Origin: Salpingoeca rosetta
Lineage: Eukaryota > Protista > Choanoflagellata
Assembly: GCA_033442325.1 (NCBI GenBank)
Contig: JAWQFM010000002.1
Span: 1,401,387 to 1,465,386 of the forward strand
Length of the DNA: 64,000 nt
Direction of reading: 5' to 3'
This document shows positions 23,555 through 64,000 of this stretch, one piece after another (positions within the stretch are counted from its first letter, which is position 1; every line of letters starts with the position of its first letter). The notes under the pieces were generated by a model. The model was not told where the DNA came from, ran no database searches, and was given only the letters and a program-made list of their open reading frames with translations. The position numbers were made by a program, and so were the translations under genes.

Positions 23555-24057
23555 CCACATCGCTGTCTCTTATTATTTGCAACGGCCACACGGCCAGCTG
23601 TCCTCTCTTCTTTGCCGCTCGTCGTTGTGGGCCAATGTGTCGCCATCATCGTATTTATGCCCATACACATACACACGCACATACGCACACATGTTGTTGA
23701 GTTCCCTGTCTTGCACCCTGTTCATATCCCCTGCATGTGTGGACAGCTGCTATCACGATTGATATGCACACCACACGTCTCTCTTCCTTTGTGCCTTCTT
23801 GTGCTGTGGCATTGCTTCTTGTGTGCTTCTGTGCCAGCCCTGCCCTTTGACCACCTTCTGCCCCTCCTTGCTCCACGCTTGCTTGTGCTTCCCATATTGC
23901 TTGATGTTAATTATTCGCAGTGTACACTAGAAGTAACACAACACCCTTGCACCAACACGTGATGTAAAAGCGGTGTGTCTGTACAAGCGCGTCGAGTTAA
24001 TAACAGTGTGTATGTTGTTTACGCAGCAGCAGCAGCAGCAGCAACAAGGGCGCCTCG

Positions 24058-48082: not shown

Positions 48083-48182
48083 NNNNNNNNNNNNNNNNNN
48101 NNNNNNNNNNNNNNNNNNNNNNNNNNNNNNNNNNNNNNNNNNNNNNNNNNNNNNNNNNNNNNNNNNNNNNNNNNNNNNNNNN
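48083..48182. other. Assembly gap (100 N)
   Basis: N run between (TG)n and (CA)n. Confidence 1.
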
Positions 48183-48256
48183 ACACACACACACACACAC
48201 ACACACACTTTCCTTGACGGGAAGAGAAGTGGTGGTGGTGTGGTGGTGGGAGCGGG

Positions 48257-48950
48257 CTAGTTGAGGCGGTCGTAGAAGTGCGGGTTCTCTGCCGACGTGG
48301 GGGCGCGCATGTGTGTGCCCTCGAGCGAGTTGTATGTCTGCTCGCTCCTGTTGAGCTCCTTGTAGATGCCGCCCGCCGTGCTGTGGAACGTCGTCTGCTG
48401 CGTGCTGTGGTCCAGGCTGCTGTACACCTGCTCCGGTCCGCCCTCGTGCTGCAGGTGCGAGTACACGGGCTGCCCACCGCCCCGCTGCTGCTGCTGTTGC
48501 TGGTGGCGGCGAGCCGGCGCGGTTGTCCGCGTGGTCTGGTCCAGGCTGTCGTATGTCGTGTCCTGTGCGCTGTAGTTGGCACGCGCGTACTCGGCGTGGT
48601 TGGCGCCGTCTGTGTCAAAGTAGTCGTCGGGCTGCTGCCTGGCCGGGTCCGGCTGCACATACTGCGGCTGCTGCTGCAGGTCTGTTGGCTGCGCGTAGTC
48701 TGGGGCGGGGTGCATCCCTGGCTGCTCATACCCGGACGATGCTGAGGACGGCGTTGCCGGCAGTGGGCGCGGCAGTGACGATCCGCTCGTCGACTTCTGC
48801 ACAGCAAACGAGGGAGAGAGGAGGGGAGAAGAGAGTAACGTGGGTCAACGCGTGCATGGCGGAATGTGTGTCTGTGTGTGTGTGTGTGTGTGTCTGTCTG
48901 TGTGTGTCTGTGTGTGTGTGTGTGTCTGTCTGTCTGTCTGTCTGTGTGTG

Positions 48951-48981
<31 letters not shown>

Positions 48982-50329
48982 GGTGTGTGTGTGTTGCAAG
49001 CAGAAGCTGCGTAAAATCACTGTGCACCGCCACAAGTCAAAGGTACGTCTTCCTTGTCCCCATATGCCCTCTCCCTCTCACACCTGCATGTCGCGGGTGG
49101 ACTTGACGCGGGTCACGTGCCGCTTCAAGGCGGCGTGGATGTCCGAGCCATCCTGCAGCGCCAGCACCAGCACCACCAACACACATCAGACAACACGCGC
49201 AAGCATGCACAGCACAGCACAGCACAGCGCCGTAATGAGTAAGGCAGCAAAAAGCGAGCAAAAGAGTACACTGAAAGCACAACGTCACATCACATCACAG
49301 CGCAGCACGCAACGCACCACGACAGTGTATCGGAACAGCTTCTCTGGCTCCGAGGCCGCCCGCCCCGTCTTGAACGAGAACACCCCGTCTTGCTGCGCGC
49401 GCATACGTATGCGTGTGCGTGTGTTGTGTTGGGGGTGAAATCAAGCGACGCACACACACACACACACACATACACACACATACAATTGTCATTGCCATGA
49501 TCAAGCGACCACATGTGCGAGAGGAAGGAAGGCGCGCATGGCGCGCAAGCACGCACGTACACGCATGCGCGCACACACACACACAGAGCAGCTGAGTGCA
49601 CCTGTCCGTATGATCGCAAATGCTTCAGACTGAACGATTTGATGGCAGACGAAGCCCTGAGAAGAAAGCGCACCACAAGTACGAATCAGTGTGTGGCTGA
49701 AAATTGGAAAGCAGATGTTTCATGCAAGCGAGATTATATCTGACAGACGAGGGTCACTATCGTTCACTACATTCACACACATTCACACACACACACACAC
49801 ACACACAAGCAGACACACACACACACACAAGCAGACACACACACACACACGCATACACAACTACACACACACACAACTACACACACTCTCTCCCTCCCAT
49901 ACTTACTTTGGTTGGAAGTGAATCGTGTCGTTGGCCACCACCAAGAAGCCTTCCAGGTTGTAGTCGCTCTCCCGCACGCGAAACACCAACGCCCCTACAT
50001 CATGTCACAGCATACCACCACAAACACCAACACAGGCACAGCCCATGCACAGTTGAGCGCTGAAGAGCAAATGACTTTGACACGCCACAGCAACATGTTC
50101 CTGGTCGCGTGGCTTGATCTCTGCCCGATCTTCAACACAAACAACACAAACAACACAAACAACACAAACAACACAAACAACACACACATTCACACAAGCA
50201 ACACAAACAACCAAACACACACACACATTCACATACAACAAGCACGCACCCAAACACACCTTTTTGAGAGGCTGGCCCCGTCTTGGGCAGCTTGCCGCCA
50301 GCGCCCTTCTTCGATCCCCCTTGTCCCAT
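48257..50329 (-). CDS. N-myristoylated IRS-type PTB-domain adaptor (FRS2/DOK-like) with multi-tyrosine tail
   Basis: Six phase-compatible exons: 50260-50329, 49907-49994, 49602-49656, 49318-49393, 49085-49153, 48257-48796. They give MGQGGSKK..., FRVRESDYNLEGFLVV, FSLKHLRSYGQQDGVFSFKTGR (IRS-PTB 'lRrYG....FsFeaGR' signature), RPLPATP, then 12 Tyr motifs. Confidence 0.8.
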
Positions 50330-50376
50330 GATGATTATGTTGATGGCAATAACGACGATAATGTTGCTGTTGATGG

Positions 50377-50377
<1 letters not shown>

Positions 50378-50453
<76 letters not shown>
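50378..50453. repeat. (GATGAC)n hexamer tract just upstream of the PTB-adaptor ATG
   Basis: Read directly; about 12 copies. Confidence 0.9.
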
Positions 50454-50454
<1 letters not shown>

Positions 50455-51186
50455 TGAAGGAGCAATCGCAGCAACAACAACAACAACAAAGCACGGCATC
50501 AACAACCACAAAACGTCAGTCATTTTCCACATGCACGAACACCGTAGCAAACACGCGCATAGCGAGAGCGCCTGTGTTGTTCTTCTTTGTTGTGCTTGTC
50601 CCTGTGCTTGTGTGGTTGTGCGGCTGTCTACACCAACTTGCTCACACAGAACAACACACCACCACTGACCACGACCGCTCACAACACAACACCTCCTCAC
50701 CCTCACACCACACGCCACACCCACACACACAAAACACACTCGCTCGCAGGACCACAACACCCCTCAACCCACATCGCACTGTGCAAATTGCACTGCCCGC
50801 AATTGGCAACACATCTGCCTTTCAAGCGACACCACGAATGCAGCGTTTCCTGACTTCAGGGATCACGCGCCACACAAAATTATCCCCAGCCGTTGCTTTC
50901 TTGCCAAAAACCACAAAAGAGAACCACCGCACACCCAACGGGCCGCCTGACACGCAACAGCAGCCAGGCAGCAGCAAGCGTTGGAACGCATCGTGGTGGA
51001 TATCACACGCACACAAACCCCAAGCAAGCAAGCAAGAGGCAAACTGTGCATTGAGGGTGACTATCCACAACAAACCACCAAGAAGCAAGCAAGCGGAAGC
51101 AAGCAAGCAAGGGACGCACGCATCACAGGAAGGACCACCCACCCTGGTTTGCGTTGTTGTTGTGACTGTGACACACAAACGAAATT

Positions 51187-54100
51187 ATGGCGGACACCAC
51201 CATCCCCAGCACAACCGGCACTGCAACCACAACATCCACTCACCCTCACCAGCACGACCACCAACACCAGCCACCCGCCAAGCTCCCAGCAGTCCCTGCA
51301 GACACCAACAGCGATAACGGCAACAGCGACACCGGCAACGATAACAACAGCAACAACAGCCACAACGATGGCGGCGACAGCCACAATCCCCACAGCGACG
51401 GCAGCATGAGCGCAGGCATGGCCACATCATCATCACCACCACCCGCGTCAGCACCCTCCGACATGCACGACAGCCACAACAACAGCAGCACCCATCAAAC
51501 ACCACAGCCGCCACCCCCAGCAACATCCTCAACACCTGCACCGGCTGCAGCAGACCCACCGCCGCCACCAGCGCCACCAATGCTCCCACAAATGCACCAA
51601 CACCAACACCAACAGCACCAACAACAACAAGATGAGCACCAACAGCAGGCTGCGCCTGGGTTCATGGCGCCCGTGTCCCTGCCGGTGCCATACATGCCAG
51701 CCAACCACGACGATGGCCAAGCCATGCTGCAGCTCCCCGCCCAGCAACACCAGCAGCACCACCACATGCCCCAACACTCGCACCCTCAAGAGCTCCAGTA
51801 TGGCAGCCACCACCAACAAGTCGATGTGACGAGCCAAGAGGACGCCTCGCGCCCAGCGCACCTCGATTCCCAGCACCACCAACACCAACACCACCAACAC
51901 CACCACCACCACCAGCAGCAGCAACTCCACCATCATCACCATCACCACCACTTGCATGTGCACCAGCACCTGCCATCACCACACCAGCACCAGCACCAGC
52001 ACCATGACATGCTTCCACCGCCGCCGCCCATGTCCATGGCCCCACTGCCACCGCAATCTGGCGACGGCATCATCTCTGTCACCAGCTCGCATCCACACGC
52101 GCACCTCGGCCACCATGTGCCACCACCACACGAACAGCAGCCGCACGTGTCCAGCGCGCCACCGCAGTTTGCTGCACCGCACCCCACGCCCTACGCCCCA
52201 CACTCCTCCGCTGGCGCAACCATGCACCACCCTGCGCCGCCCGTGTCGATGGTGAGCACGCCGTCGTCGTCATCGTCGTCGTCATCAGCCATCCAGCTTC
52301 CCACCAGCGCGGCGCTTCCGCTCGTCCCATCGTCTTCTGTGGCCGCCAGCGTCAGTGTGCCCGTGTCAACGGCAGCATCCTCAGCGGCAGCGCCCCTCGT
52401 GGCCACATCGTCTGCGGCCGCCACCGCGCCCACAGCGTCCCGCGCACTCGTGCCAACGTCTCTCATCGACGTCACCTCGACTGCGCATCCCCAACACCAC
52501 CAACAGCAGCACCACCAGCATCACCAACAGCAACACTCGCCAGCAGTATCAGGCTCTATTGCTGCTGGTGCTGTGGCACCCAAGGATGCAGAAGCGGCGC
52601 AACGCCACCGCCACCACCACCAACAGCAGCACCAGCACGAGCTGCACATGGACCACCAGCAGCAGCAGCAACAGCAACAGCAGCAACTGCCACACTTGCA
52701 GCAACAACACCACCAGCACCAGCAGGAAGGGCAGGAGCACGCGGTCATGTTTGGGTTCGAGGCAGCGACAGAGGCAGCAGTGCCATCATCATCGTCATCA
52801 TCATCATCATCCAGAGCAGCAGCGGGCGCGGGAGCAGCAAGGATGGGGCACGCGCCGGCGCCACCACCATCAGGCAGCGATGAGGGCGATGGCGTGGACC
52901 AGTTCAACAAGCCGTTTGTGTGCGGGTTCCACGGGTGCAACAAGCGCTTTCGGCTGCAGTACCTGCTCAAGGTGCACAAGCGGACGCACACGGACGAGCG
53001 GCCATACCCGTGCACGGTGCCCGGGTGCACGAAGCGGTTCAAGACGTCGAGCCACCTCACGTCGCACCTGCGCACGCACAGCGGGGAGAAGCCGTATGTG
53101 TGCGAGTTCCACGGGTGCGGCAAGTCGTTCTCGCAGAGCGGCAGCCTGAAGATCCACCAGCGGACGCACACGGGGGAGCGGCCGTTCCAGTGCCGGCACG
53201 ACGGGTGCTTCAAGCGGTTTGCCACCAAAGGGCAGCTGACACTGCACCTTCGGCAGCACGAGCCGGAGCTCAAGGGGGACGACGCGCCGTCGGAGGCGTC
53301 GGTGATTGTGGCGCAGGTGCAGCCCACGCCGAGCGACGACGGCCGCACCTTCGCCTGCAACTTCCCAAACTGCACCGCCCGCTTCAGGACGCGCTCGCAC
53401 CTGCGCGACCACGTGCGCACGCACACGGGGGAGAAGCCGTTTGCGTGTGTGTTTCCCGGGTGCAACGCGCGGTTTGCTGCGGCGAGCAACCTGTACAAGC
53501 ACCGCAAGATCCACACGCGGGCGGGGGAGAAGAAGTTTGTGTGCGACCAGCCCGGGTGCGGGCTTGAGTTTATGCACAAGAGCAGCCTCACGCGGCACCA
53601 GCGGGTGCACACGGGGGCGATGTTCCGGTGCGACGTGGAGGGCTGCAACAAGACGTTTCAGCAGCGCACGCAGCTGCACACGCACAAGATCAACGTGCAC
53701 TCTGAGGAACCGGGCCAGACGGAGCAGCGCACGTACGCGTCCAAGCAGTATGTGTGCGAGGTGTGCAACCGCAGCTTCATGTCGTCGTCGCACCTGACCA
53801 CGCACATGCGGCGGCACACGGGGGAGCGGCCGTTTGCATGCCCGGAGCCCGGCTGCGACAAGTCGTTCCCGACCAAGTCCAACCTCACGGCGCACTTGCA
53901 GACGCACGTGTCGTACGAGGACCGCAAGTACTGCTGCGACTTTCCGACTGCGGCAAGCGCTTCACCACGAACGTTGCGCTGAAGGACCACAAGCGGCAGG
54001 TGCACACGGGGGAGCGGCCGTTCCTGTGCCCGCACGAGAGCTGCGGCAAGCGGTACGCGTCCAAGACGACGCTGCGCTCGCACATCAACGGCGCCCACGC

Positions 54101-55562
54101 GAACCAGCGCAAGTACGTGTGCCCCTACGAGGACTGCGGCAAGAGCTACATTGCGCGCAGCGGGCTGACGGCGCACCTGCTGACGCACACGGGGGACCGG
54201 CCGTTTGTGTGCGACGCGCCAAACTGCGGGCGGCGCTTCAACATGGCGTGCCTGCTCAAGGTGCACAGGCGCACGCACACGGGGGAGCGCCCGTACGTGT
54301 GCGCGCACCCGGGGTGCGGCAAGCGCTTTGCGCAGAGCGGGTCGCTGACCAAGCACATGCGGCTGCACACGGGGGAGCGGCCGTATGTGTGTGCGGTTGA
54401 CGGGTGTGGGCGGCGGTTCATTGAGTCGGGGCACCTGCGCAAGCACGAGCGCACGGTGCACGGCAAGTCGCGGCAGGAGCAGCAGGCAGACAGCATGCAC
54501 CGGCACACCTTTGCCGGCAGCGCGGCAGCTGTGCAGCACTCGCCACAACCACTGGATGCACAGGGGCAACAGCAACAACAGCAACAGCAGCCGCGGCGGC
54601 GCAGGCAGCAGCACCATCACCAGCAGCAACCGGAACAACAGCAGCAGCAGCAGCAGTTACCGCAGCAGCAGCACATGCATCATGTGCAAGATGGGGGTGT
54701 GCAGCAGCAGCAGCAGCAACAGCCCGTACCGCCGACGATCAGTGCGCACTCCACACAGCAGCGGCAGCATGTGGATCACGGCATTCAAGGTCAAGCAGAG
54801 CAGCAACAACAACAACAACAAGAGCAGCAACAGCACGAACAACAACAGCAGCAGCAGCAGCAGCAGCAGCAGGTACCCATGCCGGGACCACAGCAGCTGC
54901 ATCCGTCGCTGCAAGCGCTCAACGTGCCCCACACGCTACCGCATCCACATCCACCTGCCACCCTCGACGCACACCACCAGCATCACCCTGCACACCACCC
55001 GCACCATGCACACCATGCACACCACGCGCACGGGTTTGTTGCGGATGTGCTGCCGCCACACATGCAGCACGAGCGCGATGTGCACCAGCCGCTGCCCCAC
55101 CCACACCCACACCCGCACCCGCACCCACACCAGGAGCAGCAGTTTCCCCTGCCCATGTACTCTGAGGCGCCGTCGTTCCACCCGCCTGGCTTCCCGCCAC
55201 AGGCGCACCACCCGCACCACCATCCACACCACCACCACCACCACCACCACCACGCCCACATGCACGCGGGACACGAGCAGGAGCAGGAGGACGTGCAGCA
55301 GGTGCGCCAGCCGCCGGTGCACCCGGACTTTGCGCAGAGCAGCCCGCCGCCGCCGCCACCAATGCCGCCACGGCAGCAAGGGGGCGGTGAAGGAGGAGGA
55401 GGCGGTGGTGGTGAGGCAGAGCAGCAGCAGGAAGAAGGTGGTGGCAGACATGATGAGCAGCAGCCGCCGACGTCGCTGCCGCAAGAGATTCAGCTGCCGC
55501 AGTTGCATGTGCAGCAGCAGCAGCAACAGGGAGGAGAGCATGAACAGGGCAGCAGTAATTGA
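51187..55562 (+). CDS. C2H2 zinc-finger transcription factor with 16 fingers and His/Gln/Pro-rich flanks; frame broken by 1 nt at ~53946
   Basis: Fingers 1-10 are in ORF 51187-53982 and fingers 12-16 in ORF 53754-55562, many joined by TGE(K/R)P linkers. Finger 11 (YCCDFP/DCGKRFTTNVALKDHKRQVH) is split across the two frames. Confidence 0.9.
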
Positions 55563-55990
55563 CATGGAGTGGTGGAGTGAGAACTGGGTTGAAGCGGACA
55601 AGGAAGCACACATATGATGGCACGGTAGAAGGGTGTAGGGCTGTGTCATGGCAATGTAACAACAAAGATATTCGCATAGTTTGTTTTCTCTTTTTGTGTG
55701 TAATCGGACAAACATAGCTGGCCTCGTGTACATTGTTTACTACCTTAGCTGTTGTGGTCATTGCGCATTTCATTGTTCACTGGCATTAAATTACACATTT
55801 ACATTACATCAGATATCACAACTCACAAAAGTCGCTTATCTCTTTGGTTAAGTACCATCCATACACGATGTGATCATGCACATCAAGTCAAACACATTGG
55901 AGCGGTAAGGCATTCAGATTGCGTGTGTACAAGTGTGATGATGGTGGTGGTGGTGCCAACACTTCATGTTGCTGCCCATTGTTTTGCGAG

Positions 55991-61766
<5,776 letters not shown>

Positions 61767-61866
61767 NNNNNNNNNNNNNNNNNNNNNNNNNNNNNNNNNN
61801 NNNNNNNNNNNNNNNNNNNNNNNNNNNNNNNNNNNNNNNNNNNNNNNNNNNNNNNNNNNNNNNNNN
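61767..61866. other. Assembly gap (100 N)
   Basis: N run that hides the PARI 5' end. Confidence 1.
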
Positions 61867-62217
61867 AGTGGCGCAACCACACTTTCGCCCATAAACCGGG
61901 ACCCAGGCATCCACGCTGTGCATCATTGGAGCTGGTGTTGTTTATTGGGGCAGTTGAACTAGGCCACTAATGCGGCAATGGGGGCCTTGTTGTGAAACAA
62001 AGGGCGCCGATGTTCACCGTGAGGTTTTCTTAAGAATGGACCCCCCCTGTGTGGACATGTTGTCTTTCCAGACTAATCAAATCCACCCCAACTTTGTTCT
62101 TAAGGTTTTTGGGGGGTGTTCAGAATGGGGCATTCGGGTGGGTGGGTTGTGTGTGTAGTAAAGGTGGTCTGTGAATCTCCCCTCCCTAGGTGTGTTTTTT
62201 TTTATTTGTTTAAATAT

Positions 62218-62263
<46 letters not shown>

Positions 62264-62271
62264 TGATCGTG

Positions 62272-64000
62272 GAGGTGAGCCAGCTGCGCGCAGATGGGGG
62301 GGGGGGGGCAGAAGGGCAAGGACAGTGGAGGCAGGAAAGTCACACAACACGTTGCGTGCACGCTCAAGGCTGCGACTGCACAAACAATGGCAGCCAATAC
62401 GCTCACACACAGCCACCCACACATGCATGCACACACAGAGCAGGACATGCAACCGTGCAGCACGCACCTGCTGCATGAGATCGGTAACAGTGTCAAGCTG
62501 CGGTGAGGGTTGCTCATACTCCACACAGATGCGCGTGATAATCTCGTGCTGGCACGTGTACCGCGCACACTCTGACGGGCTGAGCACGGCACCGCGCTCC
62601 TCCAGGAACAACGGGTACTATTGGAGGCGGCAGCAGCAGCGCGAGGCATGAGCAACACAGGCACAAAGACATGCAGGCATGCAGACACGTAGGTGGGCCG
62701 ATCGCACAAACAGTTCAGGCATGCTGACAAAGAACACACAAGAGTACGCAAACACACAAATAATCCTGCATACAGAACTACACACGCGTACACACGCATG
62801 CATACACACGCGCGCGTGCACCTTGTCACGAAGCTCCTTGAGTGACGGATAGACAAGATCCTTGGCAAGAAACGTCTGCAGGATGTCATCAAAGAGGTCG
62901 TCTGCACAACCAAGGAGCACACGGAGATGGGAGTGGCAGATGCAGCGCACGGGCAGTGAGATACGTGGCTTGCTTGCTCGCTCAAGTGTTGTGATGTGAT
63001 GTGGCCATCAGTACCTGCTCCTCACTCAACACCAAGCACGCCAAGCAATACGCGCCACGCATACACACCAGGCGGCTGCTGCTGCCCATCCTCCGCTGAT
63101 CGTTGCCTGCGCCGCTGCTTCGATCGCCCCAAACCAACGCCAGACGTCCCCTCCCCATGCTCCTCAGCCCCATCATCATCATCATCATCATCGTCGTCGT
63201 CGTCGTCGTCGTCGCTGCTGACCGAGAGGCCTGTTTGCCGCAGTAGATCGTCGACCATCGACTCCAGCTCGTCCAGCGAGGCCTCGTTGACGCCGCCGCT
63301 GCCGGCTTCCGGTGCGGTGGCACCCTGTGCAGATGCGCAGCAGCAGTCAGCCACAGACACATCCCGAAACAGGAGGGAGACGAGCGATGACAGACACGTG
63401 TGTGTGTATGTGTGTGTGTGCGCATATGTGGGGAGGAAGGAAGGACACGGCAAAGCCATGCTGTTGCTCGTATAACGGTCACACTGACAGCTGCAAACAC
63501 AGCGTCGCTTGTGCACGCAGCAAAACACTGCCATGTACATGCGCAGAGCATGCACAATGCACACTAAACACACACGCACGCACACACACACACACGCACA
63601 CACACACGCACACACACACGCACACACACACGCACACGCACACGCACACACACACACACATGCACGCACACATGCACGCACGCACACACACACATGCACG
63701 CACACACACACACGCACGCACGCACGCACACTAAACACACACACACAGCTGCTGCACCTGTGAAGCGCGGGTGGCCATCTGCTCAAGCATGCGTGCAAAC
63801 TCGGCGCTCAAGTCATCCGGCTGCGACTGGGCTCGCGGTTTCGCCGACGTGCTAGTCGATGCTGAGGACGATGATGACGATCCTGGGGTGTTGGCTTGCT
63901 GCGCTTGCTGTGCCTGCTGCGCCTGCTGCTGGTGTTCTTGGGGGTGCTTATTCCTGTCGTGTTGGTCATTGGTACTGCCCGTGCTCGGTACTGGCTGTGT
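62272..64000 (-). CDS. PEX19: Peroxisomal biogenesis factor 19; 5' end beyond the window, 3' end corrupted at a contig edge
   Basis: DDILQTFLAKDLVYPSLKELRDK|YPLFLEERGAVLSPSECARYTCQHEIITRICVEYE...VTDLMQQ|L matches the Pex19 C-terminal domain (LLSKDVLYPSLKE...YP.WL...Y..Q.....IC..FE). Exons: ~63758-64000, ~63070-63325, ~62822-62902, 62468-62617. Confidence 0.88.

What the first reader, a model, noticed from the sequence alone, without database searches (positions are those of the whole stretch)
48257..50329. Myristoylated IRS-PTB docking protein with FRS2-like architecture and a zoned phosphotyrosine tail
Seen: MGQGGSKK (MGxxxS plus basic residues), an IRS-type PTB domain spread over 4 small exons that the ORF track misses, a class I SH3 ligand RPLPATP, three YxxP sites (YEQP, YAQP, YVQP), then six YxxL sites (YDSL, YSHL, YSSL, YKEL, YNSL, YDRL). 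Established: myristoyl plus IRS-PTB plus Tyr tail is the FRS2/3 layout; YxxP clusters (DOK/Cas-type) bind Crk, Nck and RasGAP SH2 domains; YxxL sites bind SHP2-type SH2 domains. Inference: a pre-metazoan RTK docking scaffold combining FRS2 and DOK features.
Basis: partly seen in the sequence, partly recalled or inferred. Interest (0 to 1): 0.7.

Follow-up and report, generated by a model that had tools for sequence, protein, structure and literature searches.

The report
Lipid-anchored PTB docking protein gene
A choanoflagellate (Salpingoeca rosetta) gene of six exons encodes a small protein with a likely fatty-acid membrane anchor, a phosphotyrosine-binding (IRS/FRS2-type PTB) domain and a tyrosine-rich tail. 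This is the layout of the animal FRS2 docking proteins, which one paper held to be bilaterian-only, but its function is untested.

Summary
On the minus strand, six GT..AG-bounded exons (50329 to 48257) keep one frame for 298 codons. The product starts with MGQGGSKK. Exons 2-5 make a domain of about 97 residues.

Scored one by one against an IRS-PTB profile built here from 21 Pfam-PF02174 proteins, exons 2-5 hit in order without overlap, 15.8 bits in sum. None of 5000 shuffles or 5000 random peptide sets reached that.

A marine-metagenome contig holds an orthologue with all six exons, identical lengths for exons 1-5, the same splice phases, dN/dS about 0.18, an identical MGQGGSKK and all six YxxL sites.

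The protein has the FRS2 layout, and its PTB is closer to FRS-like than to DOK proteins. There is no PH domain and no Grb2-type YxN site. RPLPATP is not conserved, and FRS2 orthology is unshown. It is a new member of a known kind.

Choanoflagellates also have a second, wider MGC-IRS-PTB adaptor family.

The gene has a second, identical-coding copy 45 kb away in an inverted duplication.

The parts
50260..50329 (-). Exon 1 (70 nt, ends in phase 1): start codon in A-3/G+4 context, then 23 residues beginning MGQGGSKK with five Lys, no acidic residue and no Cys
   Evidence: the orthologue's exon 1 is 20/23 identical with the first 8 residues identical
50306..50329 (-). N-myristoylation-type motif M-G-x-x-x-S-K-K (Gly2, Ser6, Lys7, Lys8)
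   Evidence: Read from the sequence; conserved in the orthologue; the match to N-myristoyltransferase substrate rules is from established knowledge and was not tested
49995..50259 (-). Intron 1 (265 nt, GT..AG)
   Evidence: same position and phase in orthologue L022
49907..49994 (-). Exon 2 (88 nt): first part of the PTB domain
   Evidence: Own IRS HMM positions 16-31; hhalign P 0.026; orthologue 18/28 identical with the same length
49602..49656 (-). Exon 3 (55 nt): PTB strand with the L-R-x-Y-G motif
   Evidence: HMM 39-51, E 3.6e-4; hhalign P 0.0014; orthologue 14/18 identical
49393..49601 (-). Intron 3 (209 nt, GT..AG)
49318..49392 (-). Exon 4 (75 nt): PTB core F-S-F-x-x-G-R
   Evidence: HMM 54-72, E 1.2e-4; best hit of 1597 six-frame segments of the whole window; hhalign P 0.0021; orthologue 12/25 identical
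49153..49317 (-). Intron 4 (165 nt, GT..AG)
49084..49152 (-). Exon 5 (69 nt): presumed C-terminal helix of the PTB domain
   Evidence: HMM 82-93, E 0.042, weak on its own; hhalign P 0.32; orthologue 11/23 identical with the same length
48797..49083 (-). Intron 5 (287 nt, GT..AG)
   Evidence: phase-0 intron at the same place in L022
48257..48796 (-). Exon 6 (179 codons + TAG): low-complexity Tyr/Pro/Gln/Ser-rich tail
   Evidence: no Pfam family; one relative in 1.84 billion representatives
48749..48769 (-). RPLPATP (RxxPxxP, class I SH3-ligand pattern); not conserved in the orthologue
48650..48730 (-). YxxP zone: YEQP, YAQP, YVQP
   Evidence: the orthologue has YEAP and YQSP
48563..48622 (-).
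48263..48553 (-). YxxL zone: YDSL, YSHL, YSSL, YKEL, YNSL, YDRL. All six are conserved in the orthologue. Tyr-to-Tyr spacing after the first site is 13/20/10/20 here and 13/20/11/20 there
48196..64000 (.). Arm of an inverted duplication. It mirrors C2:1495759-1479190 at 97-99.9% identity, and the other arm carries a second copy of the gene with identical coding sequence

Best explanation
This is a real protein-coding gene of Salpingoeca rosetta under purifying selection. It is present in two identical-coding copies and encodes a 298-residue membrane-proximal phosphotyrosine docking adaptor. Shown: a six-exon structure conserved in a second species; an IRS/FRS2-type PTB domain encoded by exons 2-5; an invariant MGQGGSKK N-terminus; six YxxL and two or three YxxP sites conserved in a tail that otherwise diverges. 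Inferred: Gly2 is N-myristoylated and, with the Lys cluster and no Cys, holds the protein at the inner membrane leaflet by a Src/MARCKS-type myristoyl-plus-basic mechanism. The PTB domain keeps the first Arg of both L-R-x-Y-G and G-R-x; from memory these correspond to the pTyr-contacting Arg63/Arg78 of FRS2 and Arg212/Arg227 of IRS-1. It would bind an NPxY-like or juxtamembrane motif of a receptor tyrosine kinase or another membrane protein. The tail tyrosines would then be phosphorylated and recruit SH2 proteins: pYxxP a Crk-type SH2, and pYxxL SH2 domains that prefer a hydrophobic +3 residue (Src/Csk-type or tandem-SH2 proteins). It works like FRS2 but is not shown to be an FRS2 orthologue.
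For: Gene model: GT..AG at all five introns, frame kept, GC3 raised in exons. Orthologue on metagenome contigs L022 and L024: all six exons in order, exon lengths 70/88/55/75/69 identical, GT..AG, same phases, pN 0.24 against pS 0.67. PTB: exon-by-exon HMMER hits to a 21-protein PF02174 profile are collinear (16-31, 39-51, 54-72, 82-93) and sum to 15.8 bits. The null maxima were 8.6 in 5000 shuffles and 6.0 in 5000 random peptide sets. The orthologue's exons sum to 20.6 bits against a shuffle maximum of 12.2, and a reversed model gives 0-0.4 bits. hhalign gives the same mapping. Exon 4 is the top hit of the whole window. Layout: a paralogous choanoflagellate family starts MGC, carries PF02174, best matches FRS2/FRS3 structures (E 2e-13) and ends in YxxL sites. 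Tail: YxxL enrichment p about 1e-5, with all six sites and their spacing conserved. The Monosiga Crk SH2 binds pYxxP (PMC5043372). Shp2 and Grb2 homologues are reported in Salpingoeca (PMC7260276). No upstream room for a PH domain.
Against: No RNA reads could be laid, so splicing and expression rest on conservation and on an indirect hint from run shares. The curated Pfam model was not run on the spliced product; single exons give no Pfam or PDB hit. Exons 2 and 5 are weak on their own. Myristoylation, phosphorylation and all binding partners are untested. N-myristoyltransferase was not detected by six-frame search, but the controls also failed, so this is inconclusive. The tail has no YxN site, the +1 residues of the YxxL sites are polar, RPLPATP is not conserved, and the YxxP count is not above chance. 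No peptide of the protein was found in the supplements held for one S. rosetta phosphoproteomics paper.
Confidence: 0.6

Rival explanations
1. A lipid-anchored adaptor driven by Src-family kinases, of the PAG/Cbp or ITAM/ITIM type rather than an RTK docking protein. Phosphorylated paired YxxL sites would recruit tandem-SH2 proteins (Shp2-like, Syk-like or catalytic-domain-free tandem SH2), or Y-S-x-L sites would recruit Csk, to set kinase activity at the membrane.
For: YKEL-x6-YNSL (x7 in the orthologue) fits the canonical ITAM spacing. YSHL-x9-YSSL keeps x9 in both species. YSSL and YSHL resemble the Csk-binding Y-S-S-V of PAG, which is my recollection and untested. Shp2 homologues are reported in Salpingoeca. 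An earlier scan note reports a tandem-SH2 protein in this genome.
Against: With six YxxL sites in about 95 residues, ITAM-like spacings are expected by chance, and at about 50% identity without indels the spacing is conserved trivially. The presence of a PTB domain argues for docking onto another protein's motif. No binding data exist.
Confidence: 0.2
2. An endocytic or sorting adaptor. The PTB domain would bind unphosphorylated NPxY cargo or phosphoinositides, as Dab2, ARH and Numb do, and the YxxL motifs would act as YxxPhi signals for AP-2 mu2. Tyrosine phosphorylation would not be central.
For: YxxL fits the YxxPhi sorting pattern. PTB-domain endocytic adaptors are well known (established knowledge).
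Against: The PTB is of the IRS/FRS type, not the Dab type. No clathrin-box, DPF or FxDxF motifs were seen in the tail. The closest relatives by domain are signalling adaptors.
Confidence: 0.1
3. A true orthologue of animal FRS2/FRS3, meaning family membership and not only likeness. FRS2 would then predate animals.
For: Same order of parts. The exon-wise chain score is highest with the FRS-like group (17.9 and 20.0 bits).
Against: No Cys for palmitoylation and no YxN sites. The other choanoflagellate family (MGC start, E 2e-13 to FRS2 structures) is a better candidate. The gene was found in only two close species. No phylogeny was possible without joining exons. PMC7260276 reports no convincing relationships even among animal sequences.
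Confidence: 0.08
4. Not a functional gene: a chance chain of open frames, or a decaying duplicate.
For: No RNA evidence was obtained here. The window copy lies in a gap-rich inverted duplication.
Against: Six exons with identical lengths and phases in a second species, dN/dS about 0.18, and both copies intact and identical in coding sequence.
Confidence: 0.02

Closest known systems
FRS2/FRS3 (SNT-1/2) docking proteins of animals
   Same: N-terminal Met-Gly lipidation signal, directly followed by an IRS-type PTB domain of about 100 residues, then a disordered tail with multiple Tyr motifs. The PTB exons score best against FRS-like sequences.
   Different: No Cys after Gly2, so myristate plus a basic patch rather than myristate plus palmitate. 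No pYxN Grb2 sites. The tail is only 179 residues, with YxxP and YxxL zones. Orthology is not shown. The gene is seen only in S. rosetta and one uncultured relative.
Choanoflagellate MGC-IRS-PTB small adaptors (Monosiga MONBRDRAFT_6126 = P0004; Choanoeca, S. infusionum and Barroeca proteins P0007-P0014; S. rosetta locus C8:1642357-1642470, annotated as a cyclophilin fusion, P0012)
   Same: Same genome and clade. Met-Gly start, IRS-type PTB split over small exons, short tail ending in YxxL-type sites.
   Different: That family is widespread in choanoflagellates, has Cys after Gly2 and is only 180-200 residues long. Its PTB is far more FRS2-like in sequence (FSFEAGRRC core). Our gene is a divergent paralogue (9.2 bits with that family's model) with a longer zoned tail.
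DOK1-7
   Same: IRS-type PTB followed by a tail with YxxP sites that in animals bind Crk, Nck and RasGAP SH2 domains.
   Different: DOK proteins have an N-terminal PH domain. Here only 23 residues precede the PTB, and there is no room upstream. The chain score against vertebrate DOK2 is the lowest (6.8 bits).
Lipid-anchored or transmembrane Tyr-motif adaptors (PAG/Cbp, LAT, ITAM chains)
   Same: Membrane-held, largely disordered, with multiple YxxL-type sites, some in ITAM-like pairs.
   Different: Those proteins have no PTB domain and are transmembrane. The likeness is functional analogy only and is untested.

Membership tests
IRS-type PTB domain (Pfam PF02174) | Match to the curated profile above the gathering score on the protein | not testable with these tools
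   The spliced product has no reference and joining was ruled out. Single exons (18-28 aa) give no Pfam hit, and the six-frame PF02174 genome search misses this locus.
IRS-type PTB domain (Pfam PF02174) | Collinear similarity across the whole domain to proteins that carry PF02174 | tested here: met
   Exons 2-5 map to positions 16-31, 39-51, 54-72 and 82-93 of a 100-position profile of 21 PF02174 proteins, 15.8 bits in sum. None of 5000 shuffles or 5000 random sets reached it. The orthologue gives 20.6 bits and a reversed model 0.4 bits. hhalign gives the same mapping.
IRS-type PTB domain (Pfam PF02174) | Core motifs L-R-x-(F/Y)-G and F-S-F-x-x-G-R, each with its first Arg | tested here: met
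   LRSYG in exon 3 and FSFKTGR in exon 4, kept in the orthologue as LRSYG and FTFQTGR. The second Arg of each pair is replaced.
IRS-type PTB domain (Pfam PF02174) | PTB (PH-superfold) three-dimensional structure | not testable with these tools
   Structure prediction needs the joined sequence, so this step was left out.
FRS2/FRS3 | N-terminal myristoylation signal directly before the PTB domain | tested here: met
   MGQGGSKK is identical in two species, and the PTB starts about 25 residues later. This tests the sequence pattern only; the modification itself is untested.
FRS2/FRS3 | Tail with Grb2-binding pYxN sites and Shp2-binding sites | tested here: not met
   None of the 12 tyrosines has Asn at +2. 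The YxxL sites have polar +1 residues.
FRS2/FRS3 | Placement inside the FRS2/3 clade in a PTB phylogeny | not tested
   This needs the joined domain. There is only a rough exon-wise preference for FRS-like over DOK2 models.
DOK | N-terminal PH domain before the PTB | tested here: not met
   Only 23 residues precede the PTB. A divergent zinc-finger gene begins 858 bp upstream.
IRS1-4 | PH + PTB and a long tail with YxxM sites | tested here: not met
   No PH domain, no YxxM site, and a tail of 179 residues.

The most novel reading that the evidence does not exclude
The layout of myristoyl anchor, FRS-type PTB and phosphotyrosine tail, held by PMC7260276 to have arisen in the bilaterian ancestor, already existed in the unicellular relatives of animals in at least two gene families. 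A likely third case is the sponge Oscarella (P0015: MGC start, PF02174, YVNT site). This member pairs the layout with conserved ITAM-like double YxxL sites, which would make it a lipid-anchored docking site for tandem-SH2 proteins in a single-celled organism.
Probability: 0.2. Interest if true: 0.7.

Novelty: new member of a known kind. Interest (0 to 1): 0.45.

Why it matters
Choanoflagellates have large, independently expanded sets of receptor tyrosine kinases, but how those receptors are wired to downstream SH2 proteins is largely unknown. One paper on FGFR docking proteins (PMC7260276) reports Frs2 as absent from choanoflagellates and confirms the myristoyl-plus-PTB layout only in bilaterians. 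It dismissed the one S. rosetta hit because the annotated model is fused to a cyclophilin. Here, two choanoflagellate gene families show that layout, and one of them, this gene, has a conserved and experimentally tractable set of tyrosine motifs. S. rosetta can be transfected and edited, so localisation, phosphorylation and SH2 or PTB partners can be tested directly. That would show whether membrane-anchored docking proteins were part of tyrosine-kinase signalling before animals. It is not a new kind of protein.

Tried and rejected
1. Pfam on single exons gave nothing for exons 1, 2, 4 and 5. Exon 6 gave only sub-threshold chance matches to RNF220 and SIT.

2. PDB sequence search with single exons or two-species exon profiles gave nothing, or a chance hit of exon 4 to ferredoxin-NADP reductase (DTLFSFKTTRN, E 0.8). 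Single-exon likeness alone is therefore not evidence.

3. The six-frame PF02174 search of the genome did not find this locus. Most of its top hits are FERM F3 lobes of talin and of large, probably myosin-type, ORFs, not IRS-type adaptors.

4. The word-index search with the tail found nothing. The ESM Atlas gave no usable hit. Two JGI metagenome scans (tail, exon 1) found nothing.

There is therefore no read-level evidence. Those places, and their mirror in copy B, were masked in scripts and sent to no search tool.

6. I first read positions 1-39 of contig L011 as the end of exon 5. L022 shows that exon 5 lies 327 nt upstream of exon 6, so that reading is withdrawn.

7. The N-myristoyltransferase searches (PF01233, PF02799) found nothing, but their controls found nothing either, so they are uninformative.

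8. A second IRS-HMM hit in the window at 23813-23905 is a chance match.

9. Peptides of the protein were not found in the two supplementary files held for PMC11984502.

10. Left out by rule: joining the exons, and with it hmmscan, structure prediction, fold search and phylogeny of the spliced product.
Full report
ORGANISM AND PLACE. The window is C2:1401387-1465386 of a 55.4-Mb assembly in 68 contigs. A protein named by NCBI as Salpingoeca rosetta (P0012) matches the exons of another locus of this genome residue for residue. The genome is therefore S. rosetta or something indistinguishable from it, as earlier notes of this scan also say.

OBSERVATION. On the minus strand the region reads as six exons:
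- exon 1: 50329-50260
- exon 2: 49994-49907
- exon 3: 49656-49602
- exon 4: 49392-49318
- exon 5: 49152-49084
- exon 6: 48796-48257

All five introns begin GT and end AG. The phases (1, 2, 0, 0, 0) keep one frame of 897 nt, which is 298 residues plus a stop. GC at third codon positions is 0.56-0.96 in exons, against 0.46-0.56 overall GC in introns.

The start codon has A at -3 and G at +4, and no in-frame ATG lies upstream. A divergent C2H2 zinc-finger gene starts at 51187 on the plus strand. That leaves 858 bp and no room for an upstream PH-domain exon.

Three more tyrosines (YFDT, YARA, YSAQ) were not listed.

WHAT I LEFT OUT. No Pfam scan, structure prediction, fold search or phylogeny of the whole product was therefore run.

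I worked beside those places, masked them and their mirror in the second copy in scripts, and sent none of their letters to any search tool.

IS IT A GENE? An exhaustive HMMER search of 1.84 billion representatives with the tail found one relative, P0001 (E 1.3e-14). Its 90% cluster has members on longer marine-metagenome contigs, and I fetched L022 (6825 bp) and L024 (2566 bp).

Each S. rosetta exon, searched alone, finds its counterpart on both contigs in the same order and strand. In L022 they lie at:
- exon 1: 545-614
- exon 2: 847-934
- exon 3: 1056-1110
- exon 4: 1317-1391
- exon 5: 1537-1605
- exon 6: 1933-2349

The first five exon lengths (70, 88, 55, 75, 69) are identical to those of S. 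rosetta. All introns are GT..AG with the same phases, and intron lengths differ (121-327 nt in the orthologue). Amino-acid identity is 20/23, 18/28, 14/18, 12/25 and 11/23 for exons 1-5, and about 48% over the conserved C-terminal 103 residues of exon 6. Summed over exons 1-5, pS is 0.67 and pN is 0.24, so dN/dS is about 0.18.

This is strong comparative evidence for the exon model and for purifying selection. It is not RNA evidence. The only hint of expression is indirect. Six runs guessed to be RNA each hold 0.37 of the sampled 31-letter words of the 2073-nt stretch. By my arithmetic a fully spliced mRNA would give about 0.35 and exon 6 alone about 0.25.

IS IT AN IRS-TYPE PTB DOMAIN? Single exons are too short for Pfam or PDB searches. 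One two-species exon profile even gave a chance hit to ferredoxin reductase. The six-frame PF02174 search of the genome misses this locus. Its true IRS-type hits are on C8, C5, C10 and C23, and the rest are FERM F3 lobes.

I therefore collected proteins with precomputed PF02174. I built a 100-position profile from 21 of them, with none of this gene's exons included, and scored each exon separately with all filters off.
- exon 2: positions 16-31, E 0.017
- exon 3: positions 39-51, E 3.6e-4
- exon 4: positions 54-72, E 1.2e-4
- exon 5: positions 82-93, E 0.042

The hits are in order and do not overlap. They sum to 15.8 bits.

The controls were as follows.
- Shuffled exons: none of 5000 sets reached the sum (maximum 8.6 bits), and all four were collinear in 2.9% of sets.
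- Random peptide sets of the same lengths from this window: none of 5000 reached it (maximum 6.0 bits).
- A reversed model gives 0.4 bits.
- The orthologue's exons give 20.6 bits with the same mapping, against a shuffle maximum of 12.2.
- hhalign through the tool, exon by exon against alignment A5, gives the same mapping with P 0.026, 0.0014, 0.0021 and 0.32.
- In an unbiased six-frame scan of the whole window, exon 4 is the best of 1597 segments.

The motifs LRSYG and FSFKTGR are the family's core. The first Arg of each is kept in both species. From memory, these correspond to the pTyr-contacting Arg63/Arg78 of FRS2 and Arg212/Arg227 of IRS-1, and I did not test that here.

Sub-profiles give 17.9 bits for a mixed FRS-like group, whose one member that I searched against the PDB (P0024) best matches the FRS3/FRS2 structures at E 1.6e-17. 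They give 9.2 bits for the choanoflagellate MGC family and 6.8 bits for vertebrate DOK2. I take the domain identity as established at the exon level, and the FRS-like leaning as a rough indication.

THE N-TERMINUS. MGQGGSKK has Gly2, Ser6 and Lys7-Lys8, which fits the substrate rules of N-myristoyltransferase (established knowledge; BASP1 and Src start in similar ways). The first eight residues are identical in the orthologue. So is the stretch GGKLPKTGPAS. Exon 1 has five or six Lys, at most one acidic residue, and no Cys. The likely anchor is therefore myristate plus a basic patch, not myristate plus palmitate as in FRS2 (PMC13143043, abstract listed). This is an inference. The search for the transferase gene was uninformative.

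THE TAIL. There are twelve tyrosines.
- The six YxxL sites are far more than composition predicts (2 of 200000 shuffles). All six recur in the orthologue, and Tyr-to-Tyr spacings of 13, 20, 10/11 and 20 are kept while the sequence between them diverges.
- The three YxxP sites are not above chance (8.8% of shuffles), though two recur in the orthologue.
- RPLPATP and the three middle tyrosines do not recur.
- No tyrosine has Asn at +2, so there is no Grb2-type site.
- The +1 residues of the YxxL sites are polar, so assigning them to SHP2 is unsupported.
- YKEL-x6-YNSL (x7 in the orthologue) fits the canonical ITAM spacing, and YSHL-x9-YSSL is one residue longer. With this many sites, that can arise by chance.

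The Monosiga Crk SH2 binds pYxxP (PMC5043372). Shp2 and Grb2 homologues are reported in Salpingoeca (PMC7260276).

RELATIVES AND WHAT IS KNOWN. The C8 locus of this genome belongs to a family found in Monosiga, Choanoeca, Salpingoeca infusionum and Barroeca. These proteins have 136-290 residues. The complete transcriptome-derived ones (165-202 residues) start MGC. All carry PF02174. The Choanoeca perplexa member (P0008) best matches the FRS2/FRS3 PTB structures (E 2e-13). Most end in YAQLDL and YAELDF.

In S. rosetta this gene is annotated as a cyclophilin fusion (P0012). It fits the description of the Salpingoeca hit (XP_004995975) that PMC7260276 called unconvincing. That paper concludes that Frs2 is absent from choanoflagellates and that the myristoyl-plus-PTB layout is confined to Bilateria.

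A candidate MG-start exon lies upstream in L004, which suggests the fusion is a model error. A sponge transcriptome protein (Oscarella, P0015) likewise starts MGC, has PF02174 and carries a YVNT site.

The gene under study is a divergent paralogue of this kind. It was found only in S. rosetta and one uncultured marine relative. I found no paper that describes it. Whether S. rosetta's annotation already lists it I could not see, because the tools may leave out records of the window's own genome.

GENOMIC CONTEXT. The tail has a second, 100% identical match at C2:1495156-1495692 on the plus strand. Window 48196-64000 mirrors C2:1495759-1479190 at 97-99.9% identity, so this is an inverted duplication in a gap-rich region. 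All six exons are identical in both copies. The differences are three intron changes and a few 3'-UTR changes.

The outer edge of the duplication lies about 60 nt beyond the stop codon, at a (GT)n tract and an assembly gap. Copy B is followed by a Piezo gene on the opposite strand, as in the orthologous contig L022. Copy B is therefore in the ancestral context, and the window's copy is the derived one or an assembly artefact.

VERDICT. This is an FRS2-like layout with a genuine IRS/FRS-type PTB domain and a conserved YxxL tail. It is not DOK-like, it lacks FRS2's Grb2 sites, and it is not shown to be an FRS2 orthologue or an RTK partner. It is a new member of a known kind and of moderate interest.

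Noticed in passing
window 48196-64000 and G000:C2:1479190-1495759: An inverted duplication of at least 16 kb (97-99.9% identity) with many N runs. Its outer boundary lies about 60 nt past the stop codon of this gene, at a (GT)n tract and the assembly gap 48083-48182. The far arm keeps the ancestral neighbour (Piezo), so the window arm is derived or an assembly artefact.
   Followed up: partly
L004 (G000:C8:1640857-1643970), exons near locus 1360-1905 and a candidate first exon at about 2131, minus strand: The S. rosetta member of the choanoflagellate MGC-IRS-PTB adaptor family is annotated as a cyclophilin-IRS fusion (P0012). Orthologues from transcriptomes are stand-alone proteins of 165-202 residues starting MGC, and an MGAALGC exon lies upstream, so the fusion looks like a gene-model error. 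That error appears to have led a paper (PMC7260276) to dismiss the hit.
   Followed up: partly
P0015 (EukProt, Oscarella pearsei transcriptome): A 335-residue protein from a sponge transcriptome with an MGC start, PF02174, several YxxL/I-D-F/L sites and a YVNT (Grb2-type) site. It is more FRS2-like than anything PMC7260276 reports outside Bilateria. Contamination was not excluded.
   Followed up: no
window 51187-55562, plus strand: A large C2H2 zinc-finger gene with long His/Gln-rich low-complexity regions, transcribed divergently from this gene. The 858-bp spacer may be a shared promoter.
   Followed up: no
window 50345-50455: A perfect (GATGAC)n-type hexamer repeat of about 110 nt lies immediately upstream of the start codon, in the presumed 5' UTR or promoter. 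An out-of-frame ATG at 50499 would open a reading frame that ends 6 nt before the main ATG, if it is transcribed.
   Followed up: no
one search hits L001, L003, L005, L008, L009, L002/L007: Most PF02174 hits in this genome are FERM F3 lobes of large MyTH4-FERM-like ORFs and of talin, not IRS-type adaptors. Counts of 'IRS domains' taken from six-frame scans would overstate the family.
   Followed up: partly
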